Positions 15,892 to 46,544 of a DNA stretch of 64,000 nt are shown here, one piece after another. Source of the stretch: Lepidodermella squamata (Eukaryota > Animalia > Gastrotricha). The notes beneath the pieces are model-generated. The model was not told the DNA's origin. It saw nothing but the letters and a program-made list of their open reading frames with translations, and ran no database searches. Position 1 is the first letter of the stretch; the number at the start of each line of letters is the position of its first letter. The stretch is taken from contig JBLDXI010000046.1 of the NCBI GenBank assembly GCA_047495785.1, positions 186,001 through 250,000 of the forward strand. The letters run 5' to 3'. The position numbers were made by a program, and so were the translations under genes.

Positions 15892-18279
15892 ATGATTCTA
15901 GAGAAGGCCTTTTTTCACTTCCTTTTCCTTACTGAAATAGCCGTTAAAAATGCCAAATCGGTTGTTTCGAAGCCTTATCGACTTTCAGTGTTTAGTTCCT
16001 TTCTCATAACAGGCGTAGAGCCGTCAACATCCCAGTGCTGCATAGCCGCCACAAAATTCGTTGTTGAAAACATCAACAATCGAACTGACATACTACCAGA
16101 TTATCATCTCGATTTGTTAGTCGAGGACGAAAAGTTCAATAATTGGATGGGGCCAAGGCTTTTCATGAAATATCTTGACGACTACGAGAAGCAAGCCTCA
16201 GATGGTCGGACATACTTGTCACCCGTCACGCTAGGTCCAATGTCGGTTTGCAACAATTATGCTCCTGCGGCGAAGGCGTTGGGATTTTCAATGTTTTCCA
16301 CGAATTGCAACGGACCTCAAATCGTGAGGAATAGATGGCTGTATCCAAATATCAACAGCAGCCGAAGCTCAAGCGATGAGTACATGATTGCGTGGATTAA
16401 GGTGGTTAAAGAGATTGGGAACTGGAAGCAAGTCGGAATTCTCCACAGTTCGGCAAACCCTAATGATCTCGCTTACACCTTGGTCCTCGAGCGGCTTTTT
16501 GTCCAAAACGGGGTTGACGTCATCTACTCAGATGTGACAAATCTTTTTTCGGAAGAGTTTGTTATCGCTGCGAAGCAGAGCAGAGCTCGTATTTTCGCGA
16601 TTGGGTCTGGTCAACTTCCTCTATGCGCAAATTTGCTATGCTGGGCGTACAAGCATGGTATGCGAGCTCCTCGATACGTTTTTATCCTATCATACTTTTG
16701 CTATATGCCCCCAGATACGGTGACGCAATGCCCTTTGGAACACATTATAGCTATGCTGAGAATAACTTTCTTCGTCGGATTTTTTACGAACCCTCTACGG
16801 CCATTGGACATTACAACTAGTCTCGGCTATACCGCCCGGCAGTATGACGAAGCATTTTTGAAGTATATGCACTATACACGATGCATAGATTGGGAGTATC
16901 GCCTCAACTGCCACGATTCAGCTATGACAGGTTTAATCGTCCTAGATAGGACTGAAGCTTTTTTGAAGCGAAGTTTCAACAAAACCTTGCGTGATATCCA
17001 AAGTGATTTGAAAATGATGCCAGAAATGGTTGGTAAAATTGTCACTGAGTCTGAAATGTTTGGTGTGGTTCGAGGTTCCATTAGATACTCCTCACTAACT
17101 CGGGACCTAATCGGGGATCCCGTTTTTATAGGACATCGCTGGACTCAAAATGTATCGAAATTTTACTATACAATGGAAAGAATCGACCAGCGAATAACAG
17201 ATCCTTTTAATTACTCGAATTTCGAGCTGAAAAGATTCCCGACAAATGATACTTTGGTTTGGTTTACAAAGTCCGGCCGACCCCCGAAAGACCTCTCGGA
17301 AATTCAGCAGAGGAAAGTAATTTACCCTTGGAGAACTATGATAGCTGTGACTGCTATTTCGGTGGCATGTATCCTATATCTACTGATTTTGGCGGTTCTA
17401 ATGGTAAGAAGAAGGAATGGGCATGTAACTAGAAGATACTTCGATTATCCAAGCAATTCGATCCTCTTAATTGGTTGCTCATTTATGGTGATTCAGTCCG
17501 TTTTAATGGCTCTGGGTAGTACTTACTTCCCAGAAGCGCTGTGTAGCTGGCGAAAGGTTTTCCTTCTACTTGGCCTGGCTCTGGTTAATGGGGTGATATG
17601 CTTTCGAATGATTTTCTTGCCAAGTTTCATCCGAAAACATGCGAAGCTCGTGAAACTTCAAACAAGAAGTACGAATTTCAGGATGAGTGGTTCAGATAAT
17701 TCAGTCAAGTCGACTAAACCAAAACTTTATCGTTCAGCTTCTTTACTTTGCTGTGCAAGACCGGCCAAGCCTGAGGAGATTTCAACAGTAAATCTTCTTG
17801 CGGGAGATCGAAAAACTGTAATCGGCACTTCGCTGCTGTTTGCGGTCACGCTTTTCTGCGTTATCGCCTGGTCTATCTTGCACCCAGTCAAGCTGATTTC
17901 ACGCTTTTCCCCGCTTCAATTTGACGACGAGGGCGATACGTATTTTGAAGTTCGTGACGAATTCTGCTATTCACCTTTTCAGATCTACTGGATAGCAACA
18001 TTTCTAGTGATTCATATTTTCCTGCTAATTATCGGATGCTTTTTCGCGTATGAAACACGCCACTCGAATGTAAGCAAGAAGCTTGTCATGCACGTTAGAT
18101 TAGCCAGACTGTCTGTTGTGAATGCTACGACCATGGTTTTGGCTACGATTTTGCTAGTGCTTTCAGTCCCTGACGCAGGAGTTTACCTTCAGGTTACTGT
18201 GTTTAGTATTTGTTGCTTAATATACGCCGTCAGCTCAGCGACAATTTCACTGTTTACTATTTTCGAAAGATGTACGTAA
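15892..18279 (+). CDS. Class C GPCR, GABA-B-like, intronless; close paralogue of 12317-14725
   Basis: Collinear protein sequence. Upstream region 15690-15870 is homologous to 12105-12300. Confidence 0.9.
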   Translation: MILEKAFFHFLFLTEIAVKNAKSVVSKPYRLSVFSSFLITGVEPSTSQCCIAATKFVVENINNRTDILPDYHLDLLVEDEKFNNWMGPRLFMKYLDDYEKQASDGRTYLSPVTLGPMSVCNNYAPAAKALGFSMFSTNCNGPQIVRNRWLYPNINSSRSSSDEYMIAWIKVVKEIGNWKQVGILHSSANPNDLAYTLVLERLFVQNGVDVIYSDVTNLFSEEFVIAAKQSRARIFAIGSGQLPLCANLLCWAYKHGMRAPRYVFILSYFCYMPPDTVTQCPLEHIIAMLRITFFVGFFTNPLRPLDITTSLGYTARQYDEAFLKYMHYTRCIDWEYRLNCHDSAMTGLIVLDRTEAFLKRSFNKTLRDIQSDLKMMPEMVGKIVTESEMFGVVRGSIRYSSLTRDLIGDPVFIGHRWTQNVSKFYYTMERIDQRITDPFNYSNFELKRFPTNDTLVWFTKSGRPPKDLSEIQQRKVIYPWRTMIAVTAISVACILYLLILAVLMVRRRNGHVTRRYFDYPSNSILLIGCSFMVIQSVLMALGSTYFPEALCSWRKVFLLLGLALVNGVICFRMIFLPSFIRKHAKLVKLQTRSTNFRMSGSDNSVKSTKPKLYRSASLLCCARPAKPEEISTVNLLAGDRKTVIGTSLLFAVTLFCVIAWSILHPVKLISRFSPLQFDDEGDTYFEVRDEFCYSPFQIYWIATFLVIHIFLLIIGCFFAYETRHSNVSKKLVMHVRLARLSVVNATTMVLATILLVLSVPDAGVYLQVTVFSICCLIYAVSSATISLFTIFERCT

Positions 18280-18643: not shown

Positions 18644-19954
18644 TTAAACTAATTGCGAGCCAAACAAAGAAACCATAGTGATTACAGCAAAACTAAAGAA
18701 CTGTCCAGCCGCGCCACTTGTTGTGGTAGGAATAAATGGCGTGGTTCCTTGGTCAGAAGTTGGACCAAATGCGTAGATGAAGCCATCAGAGCCCTGTGCG
18801 TAAATTACCCCGGCCGAAAACGCGTAATGACAATTGAGAAAAAATCCAGGATCAACAATACTGATAGTCGAAGCAACAGTTCCGTCATTTTTGTCGTAAA
18901 TCACAAAACCAGAATACGATTGGCCGATTACATAGTCATTCAAAACTATAGGATTGCAAGCTGTAGGCGCAGGCGGGTCAGACGCTGCAAGGCTAATTGA
19001 CGTAATAAAATAGCCACTAGCAACGAGAAACTTCCCAAGAACAAAATGATCACCCTTCTGGCATCTGCGGTATACAACTTCGCCATCGGTGGCATAACTG
19101 AAAAAGCTGTCGCAGATTAAGCCGTCTTCATCTGCCGTCCATTTCCAAGCTTTTTTATCGATATCAATAGCTATCATTTGAGTTTTATTCCTCGTAATTG
19201 CGATATTCCCGGTTATCATAGGTGCTTGATTTGCTGGGCTGTCTTCAAGTGGGATGTCAACACTCCACAGCTTATTGCCATTCTTCGTTGCGTCATATTC
19301 AGCGACAGCATCGTTAGTCGAGCTCGCCGTCAGTCCGATCAATCGATTATAGTGCGAGAGGGATAGGTAATAAGGAATATCGAGAGAAGAGACACCAAAT
19401 GGTGTTCTCTGCAGCCCTGTTTGGAAGTCCAGTCCGACCAACCCACCGCTTATCCCATCGGCTGTATAAGCGACGACTAGATCTTTCAACCCTGTAACTG
19501 GCATTATATCGCGAATACGACCCGGCAGTTTTTGAGACCATATGACACCCTCCTTCCCAGCGACAAGGCTGATTGCGACAATTTGCCCGTCAATATCTGC
19601 GAGGAACATGAGTTGACTTTCAGGCTCAATCACCTGATACGATGCTGTCCAGTTCACCTTGACCTTGATCTGATTGATAAGAGCACCGTCTTTAGAAGCG
19701 ATAATTGCCAAATCGCCGTCGCCCGTTGTAGCGTAAATTTTCTTGTTGAGGACAAAAACTCGACTAAGGCCTAGCAGGGTAGACACGGGCTTGCGAGTCC
19801 ATAAAATGTCAATTTTGTTAACAGGGCCCAAGGTAAATGGCTTGAATCCTGTATGGGCGTAATCGCCTCCCTCGTCGATCCAATCATCAACAGCCGCGTG
19901 TGCCTGGCACAGCAAAGGTATCAAGAAAATGGTAGATCCTAGACTTAGTCTCAT
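18644..19954 (-). CDS. Secreted, probably GPI-anchored PQQ-like (BamB-type) beta-propeller protein, intronless
   Basis: Start MRLSLGSTIFLIPLLCQAHA (signal peptide). W...GGD..HTG N-terminal motif. Repeated G.l.a.d..tG...W blades. Thr-rich linker and hydrophobic C-terminal tail (SGAAGQFFSFAVITMVSLFGSQLV). Confidence 0.75.
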   Translation of the reverse strand: MRLSLGSTIFLIPLLCQAHAAVDDWIDEGGDYAHTGFKPFTLGPVNKIDILWTRKPVSTLLGLSRVFVLNKKIYATTGDGDLAIIASKDGALINQIKVKVNWTASYQVIEPESQLMFLADIDGQIVAISLVAGKEGVIWSQKLPGRIRDIMPVTGLKDLVVAYTADGISGGLVGLDFQTGLQRTPFGVSSLDIPYYLSLSHYNRLIGLTASSTNDAVAEYDATKNGNKLWSVDIPLEDSPANQAPMITGNIAITRNKTQMIAIDIDKKAWKWTADEDGLICDSFFSYATDGEVVYRRCQKGDHFVLGKFLVASGYFITSISLAASDPPAPTACNPIVLNDYVIGQSYSGFVIYDKNDGTVASTISIVDPGFFLNCHYAFSAGVIYAQGSDGFIYAFGPTSDQGTTPFIPTTTSGAAGQFFSFAVITMVSLFGSQLV

Positions 19955-20559
19955 TTTTTGCCAGTCAAAAAAGTTATTCCATGAACTGAAATACATAGAA
20001 TAGTCGCCCGGTCTCTCAGCCTTATCAAATCTTATCTGAATAAGGCCATCCGCTAGAAAAGGAATGATAATATATGTCGGTGATTTGATTTGTACAGCCC
20101 AGCGTAGTGGCATTTCAAGTGTGACTTGTCGCGCAAGTTATCAGCAATATCATTGCGGAGTGATAACTAAAAGGCCAAGCAATTAAGTGCGTAGAAACAC
20201 TTTTTTGTTGGAAGGCGGACAACGTTATGTTGTCATTTCCATTTTCAGGTCAAAAACGTGAGTTATGCATATTGGGGCGGGAAAAGTTTTGAAGTTATGC
20301 ATCAAAACGGCCCCAATGGTGCATAATCGTGGCTCACTTCGGCTGATCAACAATAATGGCTCATCGGCAATATGTTGCATGATCGTGTGCTTTTGTGGGG
20401 TGACTAACGGCTGAAGAGAAACAAATTTTCAAAATGTTTACCCGGCATTTATGCATCATTAGGAGAGGAGAGGAATTACTACACATTTTAAAACTTTCAA
20501 TTTTGTGGCTATGCTTATTTTATCTGTTACATATCAAATTGTTAAGAGCGCCAAACAGC

Positions 20560-25715: not shown

Positions 25716-27794
25716 ATGCTTAGTTTGTTCAAAACCATTGAAATGATATTTCTCGCAACGCTAGCTCACCTATTGCTTCTCAATGAAGCATCAAACGGCC
25801 AGCAGGCAATTCCCAAGCCATACCGTCTATCAGTGTATAGCTCTTTCATGATGACTGGGCTTGAACCTTCGACCTCGCAATGCTGCGTCTCTGCTACAAA
25901 ATACGTTGCCGATAATGTGAACAGCCGGTCGGACATTCTACCCGACTATCACCTCGATCTTTCAATCGACGACGAAAAGCTCAATGGATGGATGGGGCCG
26001 AGGCTTTTCATGAAATACCTGGAAAACTACGAAAAGCAAGCAGCGGATGGCCGGACCTATCTATCTCCAGTTATGCTTGGCCCGATGGGGGTTTGTAACA
26101 ACTTCGCTTTAGCCGCTAGGACCTTGGGATTCACGATGTTTTCGTCGGGTTGTAGCGGCTCCCAAATCTCGTGGAAAAGATGGTTATACCCGAATGTCTT
26201 CAGCATCCGTAGTCCAGGCGATGAGTACGCGATGGCGTGGATTAAGGTGGTTAAAGAGGTCGGAAAATGGAAGCAAATCGGAATCCTTCACGGCTCAGCG
26301 AACCCAAGCGATCTCGCCTCTACGTTACTCCTCGAAAGACTCTTCGTCCAACATGGTGTTGATGTGATCCACTCAGATGTAGCAAACGGGTACACCGAGG
26401 ATTTTGTAATCGCTGCCAAGAAAAGTAAAGCCCGAGTTTTCATCATTGGAGCTTCGCAACTAGGGTCATGTATTAACTTACTTTGCTGGGCCTATAAGCA
26501 TGGCATGCGGGCGCCTCATTACGCTTTCATCACCTCATTCTTCTGCTACATCCACCCGGATGCGGTAAACCAATGCCCGGTTGAAAATATCGTTTCAATG
26601 CTGAGGATTACTCTCTACGTCGGGTTTTTCACAAATCCAGCCAGGCCAATGGATGTACAAACCACTTTGGGGTACACAGCTCGACAATACGATGAGGCCT
26701 TTCTGAGATACGTCAATTTTACTAAATGCTTGGATTGGGAATTCCGACTTAACTGCCACGATTCTGCTATGACTGGATTGATCGCCCTCAATAGGACTGA
26801 AACATATTTGAGGCAAAAGTTCAACAAAACCATTCGGGATTTCAAAAACGATCCAGCTTTTATCACGCGTTTAATTGGAGCCAGTGTTACCGAGTCTGAA
26901 ATGATTGGGGTAATCCGGGGCCCGATAAGGTATTCGAGCTCACAAGACCTTATCGGCGATGCTGTATTCGTGGCACATCGCTGGTCTCAGAATTTAACAA
27001 AATCTCTTGTAAATGGGGTGCTATGTTTCCGAATGATTTTCTTGCCAAGTTTCATTCGGCAGCATGCAAATAACTTGAAGTATCAATCTAGCGGAGCGAG
27101 ACTATCGATTTTCAGAGCTGATACCGCGATGCAACCTGTTACCAGGACGAATTCGTTCGCCCCACTCACTAAGACTAATTCCTTAGCCCCACTTGTCAAG
27201 ACGAATTCGTTAGCTCCTCTTGCGAAAACTCCAAGTTTACGTACAAATTCAGCATTAAGGAGGCTCAGTTCAATCATACCTGAGGGGATCATGAACATCA
27301 TCAAACTGCAAGAGAGCCAGAAAGTTCAATATGGAACTTCTTTAATCTTCGTCATTTCACTCATTGGCGTGATCGTTTGGTCTTGTGCGCATCCCGTCCA
27401 GCTAATCACGCGCGTTTCGCCGCTACAGTTCGACGAGGAGGAGGATTCGTATTTTGAGATTCGAGACGAATTCTGCTACTCGCCGTATCAAATCTATTGG
27501 ATAGCTGCGTACCTTGTCATACACATTTTCCTGCTAATTATCGGGTGTATTTTCGCCTACGAAACACGTAAAGCTGATGTTAACAAGGAGTTTGAGATGC
27601 ACGTTAGATTAGCTAGATTGTCTGTTGTTAATGCTACTACCATGGTTTTGGCGACGATTTTGCTGGTGTTTTCGGTTCCAGGAGCTGGGGTATACTTGCA
27701 AGTAACAGTTTTCTGTTTCTCCTGCCTAATCTATGCTGTAAGCTCTGCGACCATTTCGCTTTATCCTGTATTCAAAAAATGTGAGAGGGTTTAG
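25716..27794 (+). CDS. Class C GPCR paralogue with an in-frame internal deletion (linker, TM1, TM2 and most of TM3)
   Basis: HRWSQNLTK joins directly to SLVNGVLCFR at ~27003. The ORF is otherwise intact. Confidence 0.85.
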   Translation: MLSLFKTIEMIFLATLAHLLLLNEASNGQQAIPKPYRLSVYSSFMMTGLEPSTSQCCVSATKYVADNVNSRSDILPDYHLDLSIDDEKLNGWMGPRLFMKYLENYEKQAADGRTYLSPVMLGPMGVCNNFALAARTLGFTMFSSGCSGSQISWKRWLYPNVFSIRSPGDEYAMAWIKVVKEVGKWKQIGILHGSANPSDLASTLLLERLFVQHGVDVIHSDVANGYTEDFVIAAKKSKARVFIIGASQLGSCINLLCWAYKHGMRAPHYAFITSFFCYIHPDAVNQCPVENIVSMLRITLYVGFFTNPARPMDVQTTLGYTARQYDEAFLRYVNFTKCLDWEFRLNCHDSAMTGLIALNRTETYLRQKFNKTIRDFKNDPAFITRLIGASVTESEMIGVIRGPIRYSSSQDLIGDAVFVAHRWSQNLTKSLVNGVLCFRMIFLPSFIRQHANNLKYQSSGARLSIFRADTAMQPVTRTNSFAPLTKTNSLAPLVKTNSLAPLAKTPSLRTNSALRRLSSIIPEGIMNIIKLQESQKVQYGTSLIFVISLIGVIVWSCAHPVQLITRVSPLQFDEEEDSYFEIRDEFCYSPYQIYWIAAYLVIHIFLLIIGCIFAYETRKADVNKEFEMHVRLARLSVVNATTMVLATILLVFSVPGAGVYLQVTVFCFSCLIYAVSSATISLYPVFKKCERV

Positions 27795-28141
27795 CCATTC
27801 GAAGCGGCAGTATTAATTATTAATATTCATACAGCAAATTATTCATATTGGAAACTGATTGAGTGTCTTGCGATTTAATTTATTTGATTGGAAAAATGAA
27901 CTGGCGAGTAAACTCAGTTTTTCTCCTCCGACGTGCTACGAGGGCGGTAATTTGTCTAGATTTAGCGAATATATATATGCCTAATCCAAGTGCCAAAATA
28001 TCAGGTTACGTTATGTAATCTCAATATCTCTAGCTAATCAGAAGGACTGACAAATTACGAAACATGTAAAAGACTCGATTTCACAATCATCCAAAGTCAG
28101 TTCGTCATCTTTTGCCAAATCATAAAATCGAGTTTCTAGAC

Positions 28142-30478
28142 ATGCGGCGTGCTGCATTTTTGTTTCAAGTTTTACTGGCTCTATTCGAAACTTTGAACGG
28201 CCGAGCAGCTGTTTTAAAGCCGTATCGACTATCAGTGTACAGTTCGTTTCTCATAACAGGTGCGGAACCTTCAACCTCACAGTGCTGCATAGCCGCCACT
28301 AAATTTGTAGTTGAACACATCAACAATCGAACTGACATTCTACCGGATTACACTCTCGATTTGTTTATCGATGACGAAAAGGTCAATAATTGGATGGGGC
28401 CAAGGCTTTTCATGAAATACCTTGACAACTACGAGAAACAAGCCGCGGATGGTCAGACCTACTTGTCACCAGTTATGCTAGGTCCGATGTCGGTTTGCAA
28501 CAACTTCGCCCTAGCTGCTAGAATATCAGGATTCTCCATGTTTTCAACACTGTGCAACAGCCCTCAAATTGCGTGGAGGAGGTCACTTTACCCGAATGTT
28601 TTCAGCAGCCGATGTCCTGCCGATGAGTACGCGTCTGCCTGGATCATGGTCGTTAAAAGGATAGGACGGTGGAAGCAAATCGGGATGCTTCACAACTCGG
28701 CTAATCCTAACGACATCGCTTCCACGCTACCCCTCGAACGATTCTTTGTTGAACATGGAGTCGATGTTATCTATTCGGATGTCACGATTCTTTACTCTGA
28801 CGATTACGTAATCGCTGCGAAGCAGAGCAAAGCTCGGATTTTTGTTGTTGGCTCATCGCAACTCGCGTCATGTGTTGCGTTGCTGTGTTTGGCTTACAAG
28901 CATGGGATGCGAGCTCCTCATTACGTTTTCATTGTCAATTTCTACTGCCACTTCCAACCTGAATCTGTCACCCAATGCCCATTCGAGCATATCATCGCAA
29001 TGTTGAGAGTAACTTTTTACGTCGGTACTTTCACGAATCCCTTGAGGCCATTAGACATGAAAACAAGCTTGGGATACACAGCTCGGCAATATGAAGAAAG
29101 GTTTTTCAAGTACGTAAATTATACTCGTTGCTTTGATTGGGAGTTTCGACTCAGTTGCCATGATTCAGCTATGACTGGGTTGATAGTTCTTAATAGGACT
29201 GAAACTTATCTGCGGCAAAATTTCAACAAAACCATTCGTGATTTTAAGAATAATCCGGAATTATTCACTCGTATTGTCGGCAACAGCGCAATTGAGCCTG
29301 AAATGGCGGGGGTGACTAGAGGTCCAATAAGGTATTCGAAATCCCGGGACATAATTGGGGATACGGTCTTCATAGCACAACGCTGGTCGCAAAATTTATT
29401 GAAACTATACTACACGATGGAAAGAATCGACCCAAAGATAACCTTGCCAACAAATTACTCAAATTATGAGTTGAAGCGATTCCCGACAAATGATACGCTG
29501 ATCTGGTTGACCAAGTCAGGCCGGCCCCCGAAAGATCTATCAGAAATTCAGCAAAGGGTAGTTGTCTACCCGGTGAAAACTATGATTGTAGCCATAGTGA
29601 TCTCAGGAATTTGTGTAGTTTATCTCCTTCTTTTGGCCGCCCTTTCGCTAAAGAGGAAATTATCCCGGCAATCTTCCTGTTACTTTGATTATCTTAACAA
29701 CGCAATCCTCCTTATTGGATGTCTATTCATGTGTGTCCAGTCAGTCTTAATGGTTGTTGGTATGAACTATTTCCCTGCGGAGTTGTGTAACTGGAGGAAG
29801 GTTTTCCTAATGCTTGGTCTTGCTCTAATCAACGGGGTTCTGTGCTTCCGAATGATATTTCTGCCAAGTTTCATCCGCCATCACGAAAATGGCAAAAATC
29901 CTCAGAAAAACGGTATGAAGAAAGATAATCGGCCATCATTTCGCTCCAATTCAGCACTTGGCGGCAGAATTTCAGTGATGAACGAGAATATTTCTGGAAA
30001 ATCAGGAGAAAAAAATGTCTTCTATGGCACTTTGTTCATCTTTGTACTGACGCTCGCTGGCTTGATCGTTTGGTCCGTAATACACCCAGTTCGGCTGTTA
30101 TCACGTATTTCGTCCCTTCAGTTCGATGACGAGGAGGATACGAATTTTGAGATTAGAGACGAACTATGCTACTCTCCGTATCAAATCTACTGGACAGCCG
30201 CATTTTTAGTCATCCATGTGTTCCTTCTAATTATCGGATGCATTTTCGCCTACGAAACACGTCATGCTAAAGTTGTCCTCGAGTTTCAGATGCATGTTAG
30301 ATTAGCTAGGTTGTCTGTTGTTAATGCTGCTACCATTGCTATGGCAACCATTTTGCTGGTCTTTTCGTTACCAGGAGCCGGGGTCTATCTTCAGATTTCT
30401 GTTTTAACTTTCTGCTGTTTGATGTATGCCACTAGCTCTGCGTCTATCGTCTCATTCCCAGTTTTCAAGGTTAAGTAG
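28142..30478 (+). CDS. Class C GPCR, GABA-B-like, intronless
   Basis: Signal peptide MRRAAFLFQVLLALF. All array motifs and 7TM present. Confidence 0.9.
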   Translation: MRRAAFLFQVLLALFETLNGRAAVLKPYRLSVYSSFLITGAEPSTSQCCIAATKFVVEHINNRTDILPDYTLDLFIDDEKVNNWMGPRLFMKYLDNYEKQAADGQTYLSPVMLGPMSVCNNFALAARISGFSMFSTLCNSPQIAWRRSLYPNVFSSRCPADEYASAWIMVVKRIGRWKQIGMLHNSANPNDIASTLPLERFFVEHGVDVIYSDVTILYSDDYVIAAKQSKARIFVVGSSQLASCVALLCLAYKHGMRAPHYVFIVNFYCHFQPESVTQCPFEHIIAMLRVTFYVGTFTNPLRPLDMKTSLGYTARQYEERFFKYVNYTRCFDWEFRLSCHDSAMTGLIVLNRTETYLRQNFNKTIRDFKNNPELFTRIVGNSAIEPEMAGVTRGPIRYSKSRDIIGDTVFIAQRWSQNLLKLYYTMERIDPKITLPTNYSNYELKRFPTNDTLIWLTKSGRPPKDLSEIQQRVVVYPVKTMIVAIVISGICVVYLLLLAALSLKRKLSRQSSCYFDYLNNAILLIGCLFMCVQSVLMVVGMNYFPAELCNWRKVFLMLGLALINGVLCFRMIFLPSFIRHHENGKNPQKNGMKKDNRPSFRSNSALGGRISVMNENISGKSGEKNVFYGTLFIFVLTLAGLIVWSVIHPVRLLSRISSLQFDDEEDTNFEIRDELCYSPYQIYWTAAFLVIHVFLLIIGCIFAYETRHAKVVLEFQMHVRLARLSVVNAATIAMATILLVFSLPGAGVYLQISVLTFCCLMYATSSASIVSFPVFKVK

Positions 30479-31460: not shown

Positions 31461-32860
31461 ATGGCTTCCCTGTTACCTGCTCAAACTGGTTAGAGTTTTT
31501 CACAAGTCGTCGATCCTTTTTTCAATAAATTGATGATGTTTTCAGGCTCTGCCGTCGCAGATCGAGCTGACAATGAAGATGATGTAATTTGCGATGACAA
31601 CAAGGGCGATTCTTTTGAAAGCTCAACGATCTCTTCCGTGCCAAAGCAAGTCTCCTCTATCGGTGGTGAGGCGCCTCGACCCTTTTTAATTGCTAAACGT
31701 CGCAAGACAAATTGCAACAATAAATCAGTGTATCAGTGTGTATCTAGCGCAACCGTTACCACGGTAAGTCTTCAATTTCTTCTGAAGTTGTGCAATCTTC
31801 TACATTTTTCTGCCGTTTCAGAGTAACAGAAATCAAGGACTAAGCGAGGAGAAAAGAAACGGTATCCAAAATCAATTGATCCTGATTTTGCATGCTCATA
31901 AGTGTGAAAAACGAGATGCTATTGCAAAGTCTATAGCAGCAAGTGTTGCTGGTACTGCAACAAACCAGACTTTTCCGGACTGTAGAATCTCTCATTGTCG
32001 ACTAATGAAAGACGTGATCGGCCATCTGAAAAGCTGCAAGGATGATAAGTATTGCACCTGTAAGTTAAAGTTTTGGATTTAATTTTGAATATTTCCCAAG
32101 ATTGCATCGATTTTAGACAAAAAATGTTTGTCGACGCGGCAAATAATTGAACATTGGCAGGTGTGCAGGGACGAGGAGTGTCCGGTGTGTGCGAAAGTTC
32201 GGGCGCAGAGTCTCTTGCGGAAGCCTGTTTTCGATTGGAAAGTTTTCCGAAAAACATCTTGTGATAACGACCCTGGAGGCTGCGGCACCGTTATTCCCAT
32301 TCAAGCTAGTACATCAACTTGGCAGAAAGAATTCGGCACTGAAGCTAGGCAGGCTGCTCTCAATCAATTCATGCAAGAATTAAGGGTGAACAGTGGGGGC
32401 TACAGTGACTTGGAGGCTTTGCGCAAGTTTGCCGTTCAAACCGAAGCTGAAATTTTCACCCGATCTGATAAATCTGAGCAGTACTTTTTTTTACTGGCTG
32501 AGAAGCTCTACACTGCCTCGAAAGAACTCTTGCATACTGGAGGAAATGGTAAGTGTTGAAGACATTTTTGTAAACACTTTTACATGTTTTGTTTCTTACT
32601 CCTTAAAGCGGAAAATATAAATGGTGAGACTTCTCAATGCACGATTTGTTACTTGGACATCGTAAAACTCGGTTGCAGTTCGAGGCGATTGATTTGTGGA
32701 CATGGTAAATTTGAATTTGCATTTCTTCACCTCATTTCCTTATATCGATGTTTATCATCTAGCTTATCATATGGCATGCATCAACCGCTGGCTGAGAGAG
32801 AGTGACAATTGCCCAACTTGTAGAGCTATTGTACAGTCGCACTCAACAAGTAAACTGTAG
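31461..32860 (+). CDS. TAZ zinc finger + KIX + RING-H2 protein (CBP/p300-derived domains fused to an E3-type RING)
   Basis: Exons 31461-31488, 31546-31763, 31822-32059, 32117-32548, 32609-32704, 32763-32860, all GT-AG and in phase. TAZ1: EEKRNGIQNQLILILHAHKC...CRISHCRLMKDVIGHLKSC...C..KKCLSTRQIIEHWQVC...CPVC. KIX: WQKEF...QYFFLLAEKLYTASKEL. RING-H2: CTIC...CGHAYHMACINRWL...CPTCR. Confidence 0.85.
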
Positions 32861-34712
32861 TTCTTGCGCGTGCTTGAAATCTTGAAATTCTAGCAATAAT
32901 TTGAATATCATCATTGTGATTCTATTATTATTCAATATGAACTGATTGAAAACATGTTTGCAGTCGGAAATAAATTACCCAAAATTATGAGTTTTCAATT
33001 TGACATTCATTCATTCATATACCATAAAAGGGTTCACATCATTCGTACGAACGATGCAATGGCATGTTTAATTTCCTTGCTCTAGTTCAGTTTTACAAAA
33101 GCCCCCGTCGGGTTACCTTCATCTAGCCCCTACTCTCGGGGGTGTGGGGGCGAAGCCCCCAAAAGAAGAAAGGGGGCAAGGGCCTGACAAGGGAAAACAA
33201 CGTGAAATTTGAATTCCACGAATCCCTGCCAAATCCCACCAATCTTCAGCTAAAACATTGGCCAGTTCAAAACATCTCACATCATTCGTATCAACGATAT
33301 GATGGCATAACTAATGCCAAACCTTAATCCTGTCAAAAAATGCTCACATCATTCGTAAGTATGATGCGATGGCTTACCCGAATGCCGTACTTTGGCTCTC
33401 TCCTGAAAATACACCGCGGACTGAAGCCGAAACATGGGCCAGTTGAAAAAATCTCACATCCTTCCCTATGAACAATATGACGGTATGTAATTTTGGTTAA
33501 CTCAGGCAATCGTATGAGAACCTTATGAGTTCGCCAAGTAGAATAGTCGTAACTCTGGCAGTCGTAGGAGTGCCCAAGGGGTTGACTTGAAACATATCTG
33601 GCTAAGGTAGCTCGCAAATCGCAAGCATCTGATACGTGTCTCAATCGAATTTGAATTATGAAAAATCAGCAATTAGAAGACACGCGCTTCTCAATACGGA
33701 ATTTCTCAGATTGAATAACTGGAACATTTATACTGAGAGCAGTGCTATTTGTCGCAAGATTCGATACAGGTAAATGCGAGCCCATGCGAGCAACATTCGG
33801 GCCTCTAGACCACGGTAATCGAATTCGCCGACCTTGATTTACCCACTCCTATAACGACAGGCAAAATAACATTTCTGAAAGCACTCATAAGACACTTTAG
33901 GGTTTCCCGTCTTTTGATGAGGATGTAAGTCTCCTAGATTTTTGAATTTTGCACAATTTTTACCATAGCCGAGAAAATCACACAATAGAGCAATCAAATT
34001 ACCCGCCCAATGCATGAGAAAAACCTTTCGGGCCGATAATTTTTATTTCCAATATGAAAAATATTCGCCGAAAAATCCGTTCGCGTTCAATTGATCTAAT
34101 TACGGGCACTATTGTGAGATTTTCCCGGCCTCGGTAAAAAGTGGCTGCGCTATGTGTAAATTCAGAATTCTGAAGAAAAGCTGCGTTGAAACTTATTGGA
34201 ATCCAAGAATCGTCCCTCTTCAAGCCAACACACATTTTGTGCTGGAAAATAAAGAAACTTCACCAAACTCACCCCACTTTTCACTTGTCAAGGGCAAATC
34301 ATAATATTATCAAAAATAATTTCCATTCACATAATTGCACGCCGGTAGAATATATATTACGTTGTCTGGTTTAGTACGAATCTAAAAAATGGCATCTCTC
34401 ACTGAGACAAGCCGGTTATATACTGTGCATTTTTTTCGTTTCGTCAATTACTTTCCAGTTTATTTTCTTAGTTTGAGGTTTGCACCTTGGTTGATGTTTG
34501 GACATCCTTACTTATATATCCAGCATTAATCTTCGATAATTGCCGCTGAGAGTAAGAGCGGGCGGTACGCTCTTATATTATCTTTCTAAATTCCTTAAAG
34601 TGGGAGCCCAGACAACAACAAGAAACCGAAAACATTTTAGGGAAAATTACTCGGACTCGAACTCGTACGAAGTCCCGTCTCAGAAATCCAACTCCCTTTC
34701 AGAGGCATAAAC

Positions 34713-37227
34713 ATGAAACTTTTAGCGATTGTCTATTTTCAACTGATAACATGCGGTTTAGCCCTAAAACCGTACCGCCTCAACGTTTTGAAAATGATAC
34801 CGTTCACAGGTAGTTGATCTAAGTAAACAAATCCCCCTAGACCTCAGTTTCTCATTTGATACAGGAGCGGAGCCCAAGAAAGGGCTAAGCTGCCGTGATG
34901 GAGCAAGCGTGGCGTTCGATTTCGCGAACAGTCGCCCGGACATTCTGCCAGACTATCACATCGAGGCTCAGTATGAGGATGAATTCGTCGGAAACACTGC
35001 TGCGAGAGCTACGATTTCATACGCCAGAAGCTTCGAAGCTTCAAACCCTCGTAACTCATCGAATTTAGCTCCGGGTTACCAATCACCCATAATTCTAGGG
35101 CCCCATTACACTACAGGGTGCAAGGCGGTTGGACCCCTGTTGACCCACATTAAATCCGTCGGGGTTAGTACGTACTGCGGGGCTCCTTTCCTCTCCGATC
35201 ACAGTTTGTACCCAAATTTATACCTGATGATCCAAACAAACCGCTTCACTGCTTTCGTTTACATTCGATTCCTGCGTGAAGTTGGAAAATGGAATCGTTT
35301 CGCTTTAATAACCAACGCTGCAAGTGTGAATGACTATCTAACAGCGATATTCGTTCAAAAAGCCGCCTTGGAAAACGGATTCTCCGTACCCTGGTTCGAA
35401 ATTGTCACTGACATCACCGATGAAGCGGCTTCAAGTCTGAAGTCCGGCGATTTTCGAGTTATAGTCATGTTTTCAGCCTCCGACCGTTTTACATGGCGAC
35501 TTTTGTGCCAAACCTACAAAGTTGGTATTACAGGACCGAAGTACGCCCTTGTTGTTACCTACATCACCTACAGTGACCCATACGCCCTACCAGACGAGCC
35601 GTTTCCTGGCTGTAAACGTTCAATGATCATCGAACAGTTGAAAATAACGTTCTGGCTAAGTTTTGTCCTTACCCCTGAAGACATGAAACTGACCTCACAA
35701 CTCGGGTATAATGTAGCTGAGTTCGAAGCAATGTTAGACGAGAAGACCAACAAATCGCGCCCTGCCGATTACCAAAACCGGTTCTTATGCCACGATACTG
35801 CATTGAAGGGAATCTATGCGCTGGACGATGCTGAGAAACGTTTGAAGGCAATGAATCTATCGCTGCGAGACTTTTCGAAATACCCGGACTTGGTCATGCA
35901 AGTCGCGAATATCTCAGTCCAAACGACCCAGGTTAACGGTTTGAGAGTTGGCCCGATGAGGTACGGGAAGACTTTGATGCAGGAAACCGATGCGGCCATT
36001 ATTGGCTACTGGAATCCAACAAGGGGCCTAGAGTACATGGGGATGATAAAACAAATCCCTGATACCCCGGAATTTGTCTACTCCAGCTATTCAATCCAAT
36101 TGTTGAGACCCATAGTTTGGCTAACGAGAAACGGCCTACCCCCGAAGGACCAAATCACAGCTAGGAACATCATCGCCGAAGTCACATCCAGTACTTTGAT
36201 CGCAGTCTCATTTTTCGCTGGAATCATCGGTTTCGTTCAAGTCGTCTTGCTAGCAATCACTTTGTGGATTCGTGAAAAGGAACGATGTATTAAACGCTTC
36301 TCAGACAGTAAGATCCTCGGCCTATTGGGCAGCCTGATAATCGATGCTTCATCGATTTTGTTCTGCATCGAGACAAACCCATCGCCCTATCTACTTTGGG
36401 TCCTTCGATTAGTCACGATAATCGTTGGGCTTTCCATTATCCACGGTGTATTCATTCTTAGACCTACGACAATCAATCGTTGGTTCAGTAGTAGAACGCA
36501 CCGTGCGATTGGCCCATCGAAATCGAGGAAAAGTGTTTACGGTGGTAAGGAAGACACAGCAAATAGCCAGCAGTTGAGCTTCAACGACTTGAAACCCCCG
36601 GAAGAAACGCAGAGGAAGTCCATCATCAACTCCCCACTCCCGGAAGCGGATGTCTCGCGATTGAAGACGCCGTCACGTTTGAGTACGGTTGGCAATAATT
36701 TGAAGCAGTCGAAAAGTGTTGCGTTGATCCCGGATGAAAGCTGGCGCCGATTTGATACTTACACATGTATCGGAACTGTGATTTTCACGCTTTTCAACGC
36801 AGTCCTATTCTTCATATGGCTGGTTGCTGATCCTTTGATCTGCGAACTTGTGGAGGCGGGGTCTTACTACATCGAACAGGAAGATACACTGGTAGAAGTA
36901 CTTAATTCCAGCTGCCGTGGTAAATCGATGCTGGCCTGGATGTTGTCTTTCGTCTTCATTCACATCGCTTTTCTCTTCTTTGGAGTGTACAAGTCGTACT
37001 ACCTTGGCAGGCAGAATGGGAGCATTCTCGTCCCAGAGTTTGCAATGTTACGATTTGGAATTGCTAATGCTACCACGTTACTATGCGGAATTCTGTTGAT
37101 TGTCATCATTATTCGAAATTTGATCGGTCAGCAAATCGCCGTGGCGGTTGGGTTGCTTTTAACATCTGCATTCACGACCCTCAGCTGGTACATTCAGTTC
37201 GTCCGTGAAAAGATGTGGCGATCTTGA
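34713..37227 (+). CDS. Class C GPCR, GABA-B-like, more divergent, one intron
   Basis: Exon 34713-34809 (MKLLAIVYFQLITCGLALKPYRL...PFTG), intron 34810-34864, exon 34865-37227. NSRPDILPDY and NGLPPKD motifs, 7TM. Confidence 0.88.
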
Positions 37228-37908: not shown

Positions 37909-40062
37909 TTAGTCTCTACAGAAAGGAACAATCCATTTGTCATCACCAATATGCTCACAGATCAGCAGTACTGAAGCCGCCACTTTTGTGCATTTCGGAT
38001 AGTCGCTCAGTACAAATTCCTTTTTACCATCACATAACTTCGGCAGTGCCATAGGATCGCTATTGCGTGCTATCGTTTCAATAAATTGACCACTTGCTAT
38101 CAATACAGACGGTCCAGTTTCATTACGAATCCCGCAACCACCGATTAGGTAAGACGCATCTTTAACTGCAAGACCTTGATCCAAGGCCTTCGGATTTGGG
38201 AGAAGTTGCGTCTTAGAAATATCTCCACCAATTGACAGGTAGAAAACCAAGGATAGCTGAAATTTCATATCTAAAATAGTTTGAAGACAGTCAACTTGAG
38301 TTTTCGCTTCTAACGCAGTAACTCCCCAAGTTTCGACTAGAGGCACAAATTCAGCAGGGTGGATACAGAATATACGCCGGCTGAAGTAAGGCCGATATAG
38401 ATTTTCGATGTTAAACGCTTCCCGGCCGGAATTATGACCAAGCCAAACGATTAGAATTGCAGTTTTAGGTTTGATCAGAGGTTGAATCGTAGGATCAGAA
38501 ACATTTGGGCATTGCTTATTGGCAGCCTCACCAGATTTGAGGTAAGATGTTGCGGCAGTGTTTTTCGAGGTCTGATTCGATGATTTAATCAAAGGCTGTT
38601 CGTAAGGGTAGAACTCAAGCAGGGTTTTCTCATTCTCACGGCAGTCCAGCCGTTCACTACGCTGCGGGTATTCGTATCCAACCCTCCTTAAATCTTCCAG
38701 CCAGGCTAATGAGATCTTTGGGTCATAATCCTCCGGCATGGACTTCGATTTAGCCAGGTCTTTGAACAGTTTTCGACAGCATTGCACGAAGCTTAATTCA
38801 GCCGGCTTGCATTGCCAGTTGGATAGAAATTTGATAAGTTTGCTCGATCGGCCGTGGAAATCAATTTCAGCGCCTAAATCCATTGGGTTCTCGCTAGGGG
38901 TTCGAATCGCATTAGGAGGTGTGAATCCTATTCTAGCGCCGGAGAGCCATAACAAAGGTTGATTGATATACGAGCGGAGAATATCAGCCTCTCGATCATT
39001 CTTAACATTGCAAAACAATTTCATCATTCATCTTTCATAACTAGTTATCGAAACTTACAAGTTTATCGAATATCGGGAAGAAAAGAGCAGGGAAAGCGTC
39101 GTAGGTGAACAAAGTGTTCTGTGAGTTGGAAAGCGCGAAGAAATTCTCCGGCACAGCAACTTTTGTAGATTCATCAAACGAGTAAGCTTGCTCTGGATCG
39201 AATTTCTTCCTCAGAACTGCGAGAACCCCGTCAAGATCAACATCTCCTTCAGTCAAACCTTGTACCCAAGACGGCGGTCTCGAATCGCAAAACTTGTACC
39301 GCCTCAGCACAGGCTTAGCTATCTCTTGAAGTGGGAAACCACGTGGCCATAGGCTAGACTGACCGAAATGAGGTAGATGATTGATGACAGGGAGTGACTC
39401 GCCCTGTTTCTGAGCATCAAAGTACAGCATTTTGACCTGCTTCGACCGAGCGCCATTCTTCTCGTGTCCTGTTATATCAAGCAGGGATTGAAGACTGTCA
39501 GCCACCTTTGTATAGTTATCAGTGTCGTAAATCAATTTCGCACCATGCTGAATTGCGAACAGATAAGCCGAATTCTTTATCGAGGCGTAGCCTTTCGTAC
39601 TGTTATGGTTTAAGCTTTTGAAACCGAGAGTCCTGGCCTCTTCGAAGGAAAGAAGACGAATGTGGTCGGGTGGGGACCAGCCCTCTGGTTTGTCACCGGC
39701 TACGAGTAACCGCCAACTAGTTGATTTCGATAACTCAACTGGATGCTTCAAATGTTCTGCCGAGCACTGGAAATTAAAAACACTGTTTAAAATCGGAGAT
39801 TTCCCCAAAATCCAACCTTGCAGCAAACTACGACGATCCAACGTTCGGAGAGCTTTTCATTCGGCAGGGGTTTGAGAGATTGGCTTGAGTTGCTGATGTA
39901 ACTGTCGTTGATTTCATTGAAGGTTTCGAGAACTGAGATTGCTGGAGGGCCCTCCGATAAGTCTTTGTTATAACTTGTGATGTAGTGGAGAAAAAGTAAG
40001 ATAACTAGTAGATTCGGCAGTGCGATTAAGAGTTTTTTCACCAGTTGGTTCTTTCGTCGCAT
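37909..40062 (-). CDS. STELLO-like (DUF288) putative glycosyltransferase, type II membrane protein
   Basis: Exons 40062-39817, 39766-39059, 39000-37909. N-terminal TM. Motifs WIVV, W.LLVAGD.P..W, KN.AYLFAIQHGAK.IYDTD, HFGQ..LWPRGFPL, NSQNTLF, DI.RSY..Q.LLW. Confidence 0.85.
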
Positions 40063-45407: not shown

Positions 45408-46544
45408 ATGAAAGTGTTGAATAAAGTATTCATGGTAGCTTTTCTAGCTACTTTTTCTAAATCTGTTTATTCGCTGGAAGATCCAGTCGAGATACTCCTG
45501 AGAAAATGTCGAACGCATCCTTTCATCAACTCACTCGGCGAAGAATCAGGCAAATCGACCCCGGTAGATATAAGCTTCAAACTCGATCGAATACTTGCGA
45601 TCGACGACATCCAGGAGGCGACGCTGATGATTGGCTTGGTCAGAATGGAGTGGTTTCAACCTTGTCTCAAGGAAGTAGCTGCCGAAGTCTTCAATGAAAC
45701 AAAAATTGAGGTGCTGCAATTGAACGGCGAAGACGTCTATAGATTATGGTCGCCGCCCATCAACCATCGCAACAGCATGGAAGACATTGCGATGAGTGAT
45801 AAATTTGCTAAAATTCGCCGAGTTTTCTTCAAGGACGGGTTTAATACTATGCAGTTTTCAGGGACATTTTACTCATACTGCGATATGGACTTTCGCCGGT
45901 TTCCTTTCGATAAGCAAACGTGCAATGTTACAATTTACACGGTGGCATTCGGGAACGCCTTGTATGTACGCCTCAATTCATCATCGTTAGATAGATTCCG
46001 CAACAATATGGCTATTATGCCTGCCGGTTCGATTTGGCAGTTGGTTGGGAACCCAAGTCGCATAACAGGTGGAGATAAAGTTGATTTCTGCGTACAACTG
46101 AAACGAGATTCTGACTACTTCATTATCAACATTTTCACGCCGAGTTTTCTTCTCTGCGCTCTGCAGCTATCCTGCTTCTTGCTGCCGGCAGAAGGCGAAG
46201 GAAGGTCAAACCTTGGCTGTACTATCATGCTGTCAATCTACGTACTGCAAAGCCAAGTTTTAGGAATTTTACCGAAAACAGCTCAGCCGATCTTGGCGGG
46301 TTATTTCTTTCTAGGCCAGACAATTTTCGCAACTGTATGCATAGTCTATTCTGAGGCGATATGTCTCTACATTAATGCCTATCCGGCGCAGGCCAATCGT
46401 AAAATTGTCCTCAAGTGCAAGTTTCGAAAATTTGGCGAAACTACCTATTCAGCGTTGGTCGATGGCGTATGCATTGTTGTGTTCATATTGGCGCTTGGGC
46501 TGTTCTGGTGCGCCCTTGCAGTCGCTTTTTCATACACGAATTGA
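45408..46544 (+). CDS. Cys-loop ligand-gated ion channel subunit, intronless
   Basis: Signal peptide, LWSP.I...NS, Cys-loop CDMDFRRFPFDKQTC, 4 TM, LPKT motif. Confidence 0.9.
   Translation: MKVLNKVFMVAFLATFSKSVYSLEDPVEILLRKCRTHPFINSLGEESGKSTPVDISFKLDRILAIDDIQEATLMIGLVRMEWFQPCLKEVAAEVFNETKIEVLQLNGEDVYRLWSPPINHRNSMEDIAMSDKFAKIRRVFFKDGFNTMQFSGTFYSYCDMDFRRFPFDKQTCNVTIYTVAFGNALYVRLNSSSLDRFRNNMAIMPAGSIWQLVGNPSRITGGDKVDFCVQLKRDSDYFIINIFTPSFLLCALQLSCFLLPAEGEGRSNLGCTIMLSIYVLQSQVLGILPKTAQPILAGYFFLGQTIFATVCIVYSEAICLYINAYPAQANRKIVLKCKFRKFGETTYSALVDGVCIVVFILALGLFWCALAVAFSYTN

What the first reader, a model, noticed from the sequence alone, without database searches (positions are those of the whole stretch)
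31461..32860. CBP/p300 TAZ1-KIX module fused to a RING-H2 finger: candidate decoy co-activator E3 ligase
Seen: six in-phase exons encode a ~370-aa protein. It has a full TAZ finger closely following CBP TAZ1 (EKR..IQ.QL.L.LHAHKC; HC..MK.V..H...C; RQII.HW..C....CPVC), then a KIX domain (W....R......A...E..I........Y..LLAEK.Y...KEL) in the same order as CBP, then a C3H2C3 RING and a stop. Known: in CBP/p300, TAZ1 and KIX bind activation domains (HIF-1a, CITED2, CREB pKID, Myb, p53) and are followed by bromo/HAT domains. RING-H2 domains recruit E2 enzymes. Inference: a partial CBP duplicate gained a RING and may ubiquitinate or sequester activators, inverting CBP function. I do not recognise this architecture from a named gene. 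The ORF track splits it into five unrelated pieces.
Basis: partly seen in the sequence, partly recalled or inferred. Interest (0 to 1): 0.85.

Follow-up and report, generated by a model that had tools for sequence, protein, structure and literature searches.

The report
CBP docking domains fused to RING ligase
A small, expressed animal gene joins the two domains by which the coactivator CBP/p300 grips transcription factors (TAZ1 and KIX) to a standard ubiquitin-ligase RING finger. It probably tags activators, or proteins next to them, with ubiquitin; I found this design in no paper, and its activity is untested.

Summary
Six GT..AG exons (31461-32860, + strand) give a 369-aa protein. It has a CBP-type TAZ1 with all 12 zinc ligands, a KIX domain and a canonical C3H2C3 RING-H2.

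- **Splicing:** RNA-derived contigs of one public run splice out all five introns exactly where predicted, including both KIX-to-RING junctions.
- **Relatives:** the spliced protein aligns in one piece (E 2.5e-54) with uninterrupted TAZ-KIX-RING reading frames on metagenome contigs of other small animals. A kinase-fused relative has introns at the same place and phase as window introns 3 and 4.
- **Origin:** on a TAZ1+KIX tree the RING-fused proteins form one branch (100/99). Their sister is a true CBP from the same metagenome sample.
- **Selection:** purifying, with ratios of about 0.16-0.36.
- **Rarity:** among 1.84 billion representative proteins only three clusters share the architecture. 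All are unnamed, and no paper I could search describes it.

The scan had already noted this family on other pieces of the same genome, which is probably the gastrotrich Lepidodermella squamata.

The function is inferred, not shown: a nuclear E3 ligase recruited through activation domains. The closest analogues are the plant BTB-TAZ adaptors of CUL3 ligases. I rate it a new variant of a known kind, of moderate to high interest.

The parts
31461..32860 (+). Whole coding region: six exons, 369 aa, ATG 31461 to TAG 32860
   Evidence: Searches give the exon and intron model. One search shows RNA contigs splicing all five introns. One search places the nearest upstream in-frame stop at 31365, with no ATG between it and 31461.
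31461..31763 (+). Exons 1-2 (31461-31488, 31546-31763): N-terminal acidic and Ser-rich region with no Pfam match, probably disordered
   Evidence: One search finds no family. One search shows the intron 1 joint 31488/31546 in RNA.
31695..31706 (+). KRRK (aa 60-63), a candidate nuclear localisation signal
   Evidence: Searches give the motif and its coordinates. The role is an inference from the motif alone.
31840..32211 (+). TAZ1 zinc finger, aa 89-193, split by intron 3 (32060-32116)
   Evidence: zf-TAZ; only CBP/p300 TAZ1 chains are hit, E about 1e-11; all 12 His/Cys ligands align with CBP/p300-type TAZ1. The loop after helix 1 is 13 residues longer than in p300.
32302..32541 (+). KIX domain, aa 224-303, wholly within exon 4
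   Evidence: KIX_2 at 35 bits. AF2 pLDDT 85-96 with a three-helix bundle; the best fold matches are CBP/p300 KIX structures, target TM 0.68-0.78; the Trp591, Arg600, Tyr658 and Lys662 equivalents are kept.
32638..32821 (+). RING-H2 (C3H2C3), aa 316-357, split by intron 5 (32705-32762)
   Evidence: Searches give the pattern C-x2-C-x15-C-x-H-x2-H-x2-C-x10-C-x2-C; the family profile hits Arkadia, RNF165 and RLIM RINGs at E about 3e-16.
32969..32974 (+). AATAAA poly(A) signal, about 110 nt after the stop
   Evidence: One search gives the position. In one search the RNA depth of X1 ends before 33000.

Best explanation
The gene encodes a small, probably nuclear RING-H2 ubiquitin ligase. Its substrate-recruiting part is a copy of the TAZ1-KIX module by which CBP/p300 binds the activation domains of transcription factors. 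The likely mechanism has three steps. TAZ1 and KIX dock on amphipathic activation domains. The C-terminal RING binds a charged E2 enzyme. Ubiquitin is then passed to the bound activator, or to itself or a neighbour, so that activators are marked in proportion to how exposed their activation domains are. The protein would also compete with CBP for the same sites. What is shown: the gene structure, its expression, the three folds, the intact metal ligands, descent from CBP, and purifying selection. What is inferred: nuclear location, E2 binding, which activators bind, and what ubiquitination does to them.
For: - **Gene and expression:** all five introns are spliced in RNA contigs, some with no mismatch to this locus.
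- **TAZ1:** the TAZ matches only CBP/p300 TAZ1 structures, with 12 of 12 zinc ligands.
- **KIX:** it passes the Pfam cut-off, folds at pLDDT 85-96 and superposes on CBP KIX. The helix-3 core Y-x-x-LLAEK-x-Y-x-x-x-KEL keeps the Tyr658 and Lys662 equivalents that contact phospho-CREB in CBP (the residue roles are from my own knowledge).
- **RING:** it is canonical, with 8 ligands and the Ile (CxIC), Trp, Pro (CPxC) and Arg after the last Cys that active RING-H2 ligases use on their E2 (roles from my own knowledge). Its nearest solved relatives are active ligases: Arkadia, RNF165, RLIM, RNF38.
- **One polypeptide:** five clusters of uninterrupted TAZ-KIX-RING reading frames exist in other organisms, and the spliced protein aligns with one over aa 75-361 in a single piece, E 2.5e-54.
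- **Single origin:** the RING-fused proteins form one branch at 100/99 on a tree that excludes the RING columns.
- **Selection:** pN/pS is about 0.36 among the variants laid on this locus. For a relative pair dN/dS is 0.31 overall, 0.16 in KIX and 0.19 in the RING.
Against: - No biochemical datum exists: E3 activity, E2 choice, ligands and localisation are all untested.
- Helix 1 of KIX has small residues where CBP has Leu599, His602 and Leu603. Binding of pKID or Myb may therefore be altered or lost.
- TAZ1 carries a longer loop after helix 1.
- The RING region of the relative's model is only moderately confident (pLDDT 66-75).
- Foldseek E-values are weak (0.02-0.2) because the domains are small.
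- The selection estimates are crude. One uses only the 39 differences listed by read laying; the other uses a pair near saturation (dS 0.63).
Confidence: 0.55

Rival explanations
1. Recruited ligase. Transcription factors are the recruiters, not the substrates. TAZ1-KIX brings the RING to enhancers and promoters, where it ubiquitinates histones, CBP, Mediator or polymerase components. The protein would then act as a co-regulator, positive or negative.
For: It rests on the same domain evidence as the main reading. In CBP itself TAZ1 and KIX are recruitment modules. p300/CBP is reported to have ubiquitin-ligase activity of its own toward p53 (PMC12547938), so acetylation-independent outputs of this scaffold have precedent.
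Against: Nothing in the 369 aa binds chromatin or other machinery; there is no bromodomain, PHD or HAT. With very short linkers (31 aa between TAZ1 and KIX, about 12 between KIX and RING), the bound activator is the closest lysine source.
Confidence: 0.15
2. Pure decoy. The protein competes with CBP for activation domains and so damps transcription. The RING serves only its own turnover or dimerisation.
For: Short TAZ1-KIX-only proteins without any RING exist in other animals (Rotaria sordida, Aphidius gifuensis). A stand-alone docking module can therefore be kept by selection.
Against: The RING is as constrained as KIX (dN/dS 0.19 against 0.16). It keeps every E2-contact hallmark across members that are only 27-38% identical. 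The fusion has persisted through deep divergence.
Confidence: 0.15
3. Conflict module. The family is a bait ligase aimed at foreign proteins that mimic activation domains, such as those of viruses or mobile elements, or it is otherwise engaged in an arms race. That would explain the many paralogues and variant fusions.
For: There are many paralogue contigs at 90-99% identity, several loci in this genome and kinase-fused variants. A family-type TAZ1-only reading frame lies on a virus-like contig with a protein-primed polymerase B and RING proteins, and it nests inside the family on the TAZ tree at 98/82.
Against: Selection looks purifying, not diversifying, on the crude estimates. The virus-like nature of that contig rests on gene density and one polymerase match only. 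No infection data exist.
Confidence: 0.1
4. Artefact or dead gene: a chance concatenation of exons from two genes, or a decaying CBP fragment.
For: The bacterial-style ORF list splits the gene into pieces, and no annotated protein of this genome is in the databases.
Against: All five splice joints are seen in RNA. The frame is open. All 20 metal ligands are intact. Intronless collinear homologues exist, two intron positions are conserved, and selection is purifying.
Confidence: 0.03

Closest known systems
CBP/p300 (KAT3) coactivators
   Same: The TAZ1 and KIX domains have the same order, fold and zinc ligands. One alignment piece covers both domains: 30% identity to a vertebrate p300-like protein (E 6e-36) and 33% to a metagenome CBP (E 8e-43). 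The tree places the family as sister to a true CBP.
   Different: The protein has 369 aa instead of about 2400. It has no bromodomain, no CBP-type RING (PF06001), and no PHD, HAT, ZZ, TAZ2 or IBiD; it ends in a canonical RING-H2. The TAZ1-KIX linker is about 31 aa, against 60-228 aa in most CBPs.
Plant BTB-TAZ (BT1-BT5, MdBT2) adaptors of CUL3 ligases
   Same: The logic is the same: a TAZ protein-interaction finger joined to a ubiquitin-ligase module that selects substrates, many of them transcription factors (PMC11101318, PMC8774732).
   Different: BT proteins use a BTB domain to reach CUL3 and have no KIX and no RING of their own. They are confined to plants. Here the ligase module is a RING in the same chain and the docking part is the animal CBP TAZ1-KIX pair. 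The two arose independently.
Arkadia/RNF111, RNF165 (ARK2C), RLIM/RNF12 and RNF38 C-terminal RING-H2 ligases
   Same: These are the closest solved RINGs (E 3e-16 to 1e-13; rmsd 1.4-2.0 Å to the model of a family member). The RING sits at the C-terminus. The Ile, Trp and Pro E2 contacts and the Arg after the last Cys are present. Several of these ligases act on transcription regulators.
   Different: Their substrate-binding regions (SUMO-interaction motifs, basic regions) are unrelated to TAZ1 or KIX.
Unnamed metagenome reading frames P0002, P0079, P0080, P0010, P0014
   Same: They have the same three domains in the same order, are collinear with the window protein at 27-38% identity, and share one branch on the tree.
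   Different: They are intronless, 305-320 aa long, lack the long N-terminal region and come from other, unidentified small animals (contig GC 37-39%).
Teleost LOC115377643 (Myripristis murdjan), 'p300-like': TAZ1 + KIX repeats + SOCS box
   Same: CBP docking domains are joined to a ubiquitin-ligase recruiting element, here a SOCS box.
   Different: The ligase link is a SOCS box, an adaptor for cullin ligases, not a RING. Its TAZ1 and KIX are vertebrate p300-like and lie outside this family on the tree. It is a RefSeq prediction from one species.

Membership tests
CBP/p300 (KAT3) acetyltransferase family | TAZ1 zinc finger with three HCCC sites | tested here: met
   zf-TAZ; only TAZ1 chains are hit; 12 of 12 ligands align.
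CBP/p300 (KAT3) acetyltransferase family | KIX three-helix bundle after TAZ1 | tested here: met
   KIX_2 at 35 bits against a cut-off of 25.6; the fold matches CBP KIX.
CBP/p300 (KAT3) acetyltransferase family | Catalytic core: bromodomain, CBP-type RING, PHD and HAT | tested here: not met
   The frame ends at aa 369 straight after the RING-H2. No such Pfam hit appears on any exon, whereas the true CBP fragment P0003 shows Bromodomain, PF06001 and PHD_P300.
RING-H2 (C3H2C3) E3 ubiquitin ligases | Eight zinc ligands with C-x2-C...C-x-H-x2-H-x2-C...C-x2-C spacing | tested here: met
   the regular expression matches aa 316-357; zf-rbx1 and zf-RING_2.
RING-H2 (C3H2C3) E3 ubiquitin ligases | E2-contact residues (Ile in CxIC, Trp in the helix, Pro in CPxC, Arg after the last Cys) | tested here: met
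   The alignment shows all four in the window protein and in the metagenome members. Their roles are from my own knowledge of RNF38, Arkadia and RNF4 structures.
RING-H2 (C3H2C3) E3 ubiquitin ligases | Ubiquitin transfer with an E2 in vitro | not testable with these tools
   This needs a biochemical assay.
TAZ1-KIX-RING family (unnamed; metagenome ORFs and paralogues in this genome) | Collinear TAZ1, KIX and RING-H2 in one polypeptide | tested here: met
   a single tblastn piece over aa 75-361, E 2.5e-54; alignment.
TAZ1-KIX-RING family (unnamed; metagenome ORFs and paralogues in this genome) | Common descent of the TAZ1-KIX part, apart from canonical CBP | tested here: met
   one branch at 100/99 with the RING columns excluded; 100/99 on TAZ alone.
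Plant BTB-TAZ (BT) CUL3 adaptors | N-terminal BTB/POZ domain | tested here: not met
   No BTB hit appears on any exon. This is a functional analogue only.

The most novel reading that the evidence does not exclude
Gastrotrichs and some other tiny animals have evolved and expanded a class of 'activation-domain reader' ubiquitin ligases. These are CBP's own TAZ1-KIX docking pair wired directly to a RING, in some members also to a kinase. They would make an exposed activation domain act as a degradation signal in trans. The family may also be caught in a conflict with virus-like elements that carry a stolen family-type TAZ1.
Probability: 0.25. Interest if true: 0.8.

Novelty: new variant of a known kind. 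Interest (0 to 1): 0.62.

Why it matters
Activation domains and degradation signals have long been known to overlap in transcription factors, but the ligases that read activation domains as such are poorly defined. A natural protein that joins the two best-studied activation-domain receptors (CBP TAZ1 and KIX) to a working-type RING would be a direct, testable form of that link. It would also be a natural counterpart of engineered degraders. It is small (369 aa) and built of well-behaved domains, so binding and ubiquitination assays are simple. It also shows that parts of CBP can be reused outside acetylation, in a barely studied phylum whose genome has no published gene annotation that I could find.

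Tried and rejected
- **Whole protein in the remote tools:** the spliced 369-aa protein could not be handed to them, because there is no reference for a spliced product. Pfam, PDB and folding were run on the exon pieces and on the intronless relative P0002. Whole-protein comparisons were done locally.
- **KIX against PDB:** a single-sequence phmmer search of exon 4 found only the TAZ1 tail, not KIX. KIX appeared only with the family profile (E 3e-7) and by fold.
- **ESM Atlas:** the feature search with P0002 gave no usable hit, which shows nothing either way.
- **Foldseek:** no match reached E 0.001. I relied on rank, probability 1.00 and TM-scores normalised to the target.
- **Paralogue in the window:** none was found.
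- **RNA genes in the window:** no tRNA or Rfam hit.
- **Literature:** searches for the architecture and the planarian CBP family paper gave only full-length CBPs. Nothing has TAZ + KIX + RING-H2.
- **Organism:** I ran no further search on it. The identification rests on earlier notes plus matching published assembly figures.
- **Rejected, RING inherited from CBP:** there is no PF06001 signal, and the nearest RINGs are Arkadia-like.
- **Rejected, TAZ2 identity:** no TAZ2 chain appears, and the TAZ2 superpositions are much worse.

Full report
**What is there**

On the + strand, six exons (31461-31488, 31546-31763, 31822-32059, 32117-32548, 32609-32704, 32763-32860) join into an open frame of 1110 nt, 369 aa.
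- Every intron starts GT and ends AG. The introns are 57-60 nt long.
- The nearest upstream in-frame stop is at 31365, with no ATG between it and 31461.
- An AATAAA lies at 32969, about 110 nt after the stop.
- Pfam on the exon pieces gives zf-TAZ in exon 3 (E 1.7e-8) running on into exon 4, KIX_2 in exon 4 (E 1.3e-8, 35 bits against a cut-off of 25.6), and zf-rbx1 and zf-RING_2 in exon 6. Exon 5 holds the first half of the RING.

**Is it transcribed and spliced as predicted?**

Two public runs hold this stretch.
- X2 behaves as genomic DNA. Its contigs run through the introns and the flanks.
- X1 covers only 31404 to about 33000. Its contigs skip 31489-31545, 31764-31821, 32060-32116, 32549-32608 and 32705-32762, each with GT..AG ends. 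These are exactly the five predicted introns.
- Some X1 contigs match the locus without a mismatch, for instance the one that crosses intron 5 and runs to 32945.
- The weakest join is intron 4 (KIX to RING). The exact-locus contig has 29 letters on its short side. Two further contigs, from diverged paralogues, cross the same junction with 23 and 31 letters.
- These are contigs, so they show presence and splicing but not expression level, and no single contig spans the whole mRNA.

**The domains**

TAZ:
- Exon 3 matches only CBP/p300 TAZ1 chains in the PDB (1l3e, 1u2n, 1r8u, 1l8c, 7qgs; E about 1e-11) and no TAZ2 chain.
- All twelve His/Cys zinc ligands align with those of p300-type TAZ1.
- The loop after helix 1 is 13 residues longer than in p300.

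KIX:
- An AlphaFold model of exon 4 gives pLDDT 85-96 over residues 65-140, with the short helix plus three long helices expected of KIX.
- Its best fold matches are CBP/p300 KIX structures (6dmx, 1sb0, 1kdx, 5svh, 9jej), with target-normalised TM 0.68-0.78 and rmsd 2.2-3.9 Å. The Foldseek E-values are weak, about 0.15.
- In the alignment the equivalents of Trp591, Arg600, Leu653, Ala654, Tyr658 and Lys662 are kept. Tyr650 and Tyr631 are Phe. Leu599, His602 and Leu603 of helix 1 are Ala (CBP numbering and residue roles are from my own knowledge).

RING:
- It is a canonical C3H2C3 finger, aa 316-357. It has Ile in CxIC, a Trp in the helix, CPxC, and Arg after the last Cys.
- The family profile hits Arkadia, RNF165, RNF4, RNF126 and RLIM RINGs at E 3e-16 to 1e-13. 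It also hits CBP TAZ1 at 2.6e-18 and CBP KIX at 3e-7, in that order along the profile.
- It is not CBP's own atypical RING. PF06001 is found in the true CBP fragment P0003 and does not appear among the families listed for this gene's exon pieces.

N-terminal region:
- The 88 residues before TAZ1 have no family match. They contain a KRRK run, a possible nuclear signal. This is inference.

**A family, not a one-off**

An exhaustive HMMER scan of 1.84 billion representative proteins with exon 4 found 63 hits. The best is only 38% identical, so this genome's own protein is not in that library.
- Three hits (P0002, P0010, P0014; 305-314 aa) have zf-TAZ, KIX and zf-RING_2 in the same order.
- A word-indexed search of 5.8 billion clusters with a family profile added only P0079, P0080 and a 97-aa TAZ-only protein, P0081.
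- All of these come from metagenome or run assemblies, and none carries a name.
- On their contigs the genes are single uninterrupted reading frames among animal genes: Cys-loop channels, fibrinogen/PAN, DEG/ENaC, galactosyltransferases.
- The spliced window protein aligns with one of them over aa 75-361 in a single piece, E 2.5e-54. This supports the exon joins independently of the RNA.
- One metagenome sample holds at least two family members and a true CBP fragment.
- A further relative, L008, is a kinase-TAZ1-KIX-RING gene. It has introns at the same place and phase as window introns 3 and 4, and its RING lies in one exon.

On a tree of TAZ1+KIX columns only:
- The six RING-fused rows form one branch (100/99).
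- The true CBP fragment P0003, whose TAZ1-KIX linker is also short, is their sister (98/94).
- A TAZ-only tree agrees.

In the window's own organism, many contigs at 90-99% identity lie on the locus in both runs, so close paralogues or alleles exist. Earlier notes of this scan list the same architecture, and kinase-fused forms, on other pieces of this genome.

**Selection**

- Of the 39 single-base differences that read laying listed inside the exons, 17 are synonymous and 22 are not. The gene has 242 synonymous and 865 non-synonymous sites, so pN/pS is about 0.36. No zinc ligand is changed.
- For the relative pair L001/L003, Nei-Gojobori dN/dS is 0.31 overall, 0.35 in TAZ1, 0.16 in KIX and 0.19 in the RING.
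- Both figures are crude, but both point to constraint on all three domains.

**How it most likely works**

The protein probably acts as a RING-H2 ligase whose substrate-recruiting part is the CBP docking pair.
- TAZ1 and KIX would bind activation domains. The RING would bring a charged E2.
- With linkers of only about 31 and 12 residues, the bound factor is the nearest target.
- The protein would also compete with CBP for the same sites.

Shown here are the structure, the expression, the folds, the ligands, the descent and the constraint. Binding partners, E2 use, localisation and outcome are inferred.

The rivals are:
- recruitment of the ligase by activators to other targets;
- a pure decoy whose RING only controls its own level;
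- a role in conflict with foreign activation-domain mimics.

The last is prompted by the paralogue number and by P0081. This family-type TAZ1-only reading frame lies on a densely packed contig with a protein-primed polymerase B and RING proteins, and it nests inside the family.

**Comparison with what is known**

- **Not a CBP/p300 member in the enzymatic sense.** The catalytic core is absent.
- **Member of the RING-H2 ligase class** by sequence criteria.
- **Closest functional analogues:** the plant BTB-TAZ proteins, which are substrate adaptors of CUL3 ligases (PMC11101318, PMC8774732). They have BTB instead of RING, have no KIX, and arose separately.
- **p300/CBP itself** is reported to ubiquitinate p53 (PMC12547938).
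- **One teleost RefSeq locus** joins TAZ1 and KIX repeats to a SOCS box.
- **Literature:** full-text searches for the TAZ+KIX+RING combination found no description. The planarian CBP family paper reports full-length CBPs only.

**Organism**

- The window has 42.4% GC. It carries animal genes: a run of intronless class C receptor-like ORFs, a Cys-loop channel and a STELLO-type transferase.
- Earlier agents of this scan took the genome for the gastrotrich Lepidodermella squamata.
- The published assembly of that species has 122 Mb, 157 contigs and 43% GC, and its completeness was measured with BUSCO in genome mode (PMC11660948).
- That fits the scan's 1994 windows on 148 pieces, and would fit the absence of this protein from the databases. 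It is consistent, not proven.

**Limits**

- The spliced protein could not be submitted as such to the remote tools, so domain tests used exon pieces and an intronless relative.

Noticed in passing
window 9404-11707, 12311-14725, 15892-18279, 25716-27794, 28112-30478, 34909-37227 (+ strand): A same-strand run of six intronless ORFs of 690-800 aa, each with an ANF_receptor ligand-binding domain and one also with a 7tm_3 match. This is a tandem family of class C GPCR-like receptors. The TAZ-KIX-RING gene sits between the last two.
   Followed up: partly
window 31656-31739 (inside exon 2): In the DNA run X2 this ~80-nt piece has about 100 times the depth of its flanks (4883 against about 50; 18 contigs), with loose ends on both sides. 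In the RNA run it is only modestly raised. It therefore seems to be multi-copy elsewhere in the genome, but the window holds no second copy. It encodes the stretch around KRRK. Unexplained.
   Followed up: partly
L005:4903-5196 and the rest of L005 (Logan contig of 34,960 bp): A 97-aa TAZ1-only reading frame is 45% identical to the window TAZ1 and nests inside the RING-fused family on the TAZ tree. It lies among tightly packed same-strand ORFs that include a 955-aa protein-primed polymerase B and two RING proteins. This may be a virus or a Polinton-like element that captured a family-type TAZ1.
   Followed up: partly
L008:1191-3000 (ENA metagenome contig, GC 34%): A kinase-TAZ1-KIX-RING gene in another organism. 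It has introns at the same position and phase as window introns 3 and 4, but its RING lies in one exon. It matches the kinase-fused forms that earlier readers noted in this genome.
   Followed up: partly
P0005, P0028 (Myripristis murdjan LOC115377643 isoforms): Teleost RefSeq models join p300-like TAZ1 plus three KIX domains, or four KIX domains, to a C-terminal SOCS box. This is an independent join of CBP docking domains to a ubiquitin-ligase adaptor motif, seen in one species only.
   Followed up: partly
P0004, P0007, P0050, P0022, P0024: CBP docking domains are reshuffled in several animals: three TAZ1 in a Watersipora subatra protein, two TAZ1 plus KIX in Homalodisca vitripennis, four KIX_2 repeats in unnamed proteins, and short TAZ1-KIX-only proteins in Rotaria sordida and Aphidius gifuensis.
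   Followed up: no
window 18644-20113 (-), 37909-39027 (-), 45408-46544 (+): Other long ORFs: a PQQ_2-type beta-propeller, a STELLO-type glycosyltransferase piece, and a Cys-loop channel ligand-binding domain. They are ordinary animal genes and served here only to judge the kind of organism.
   Followed up: no
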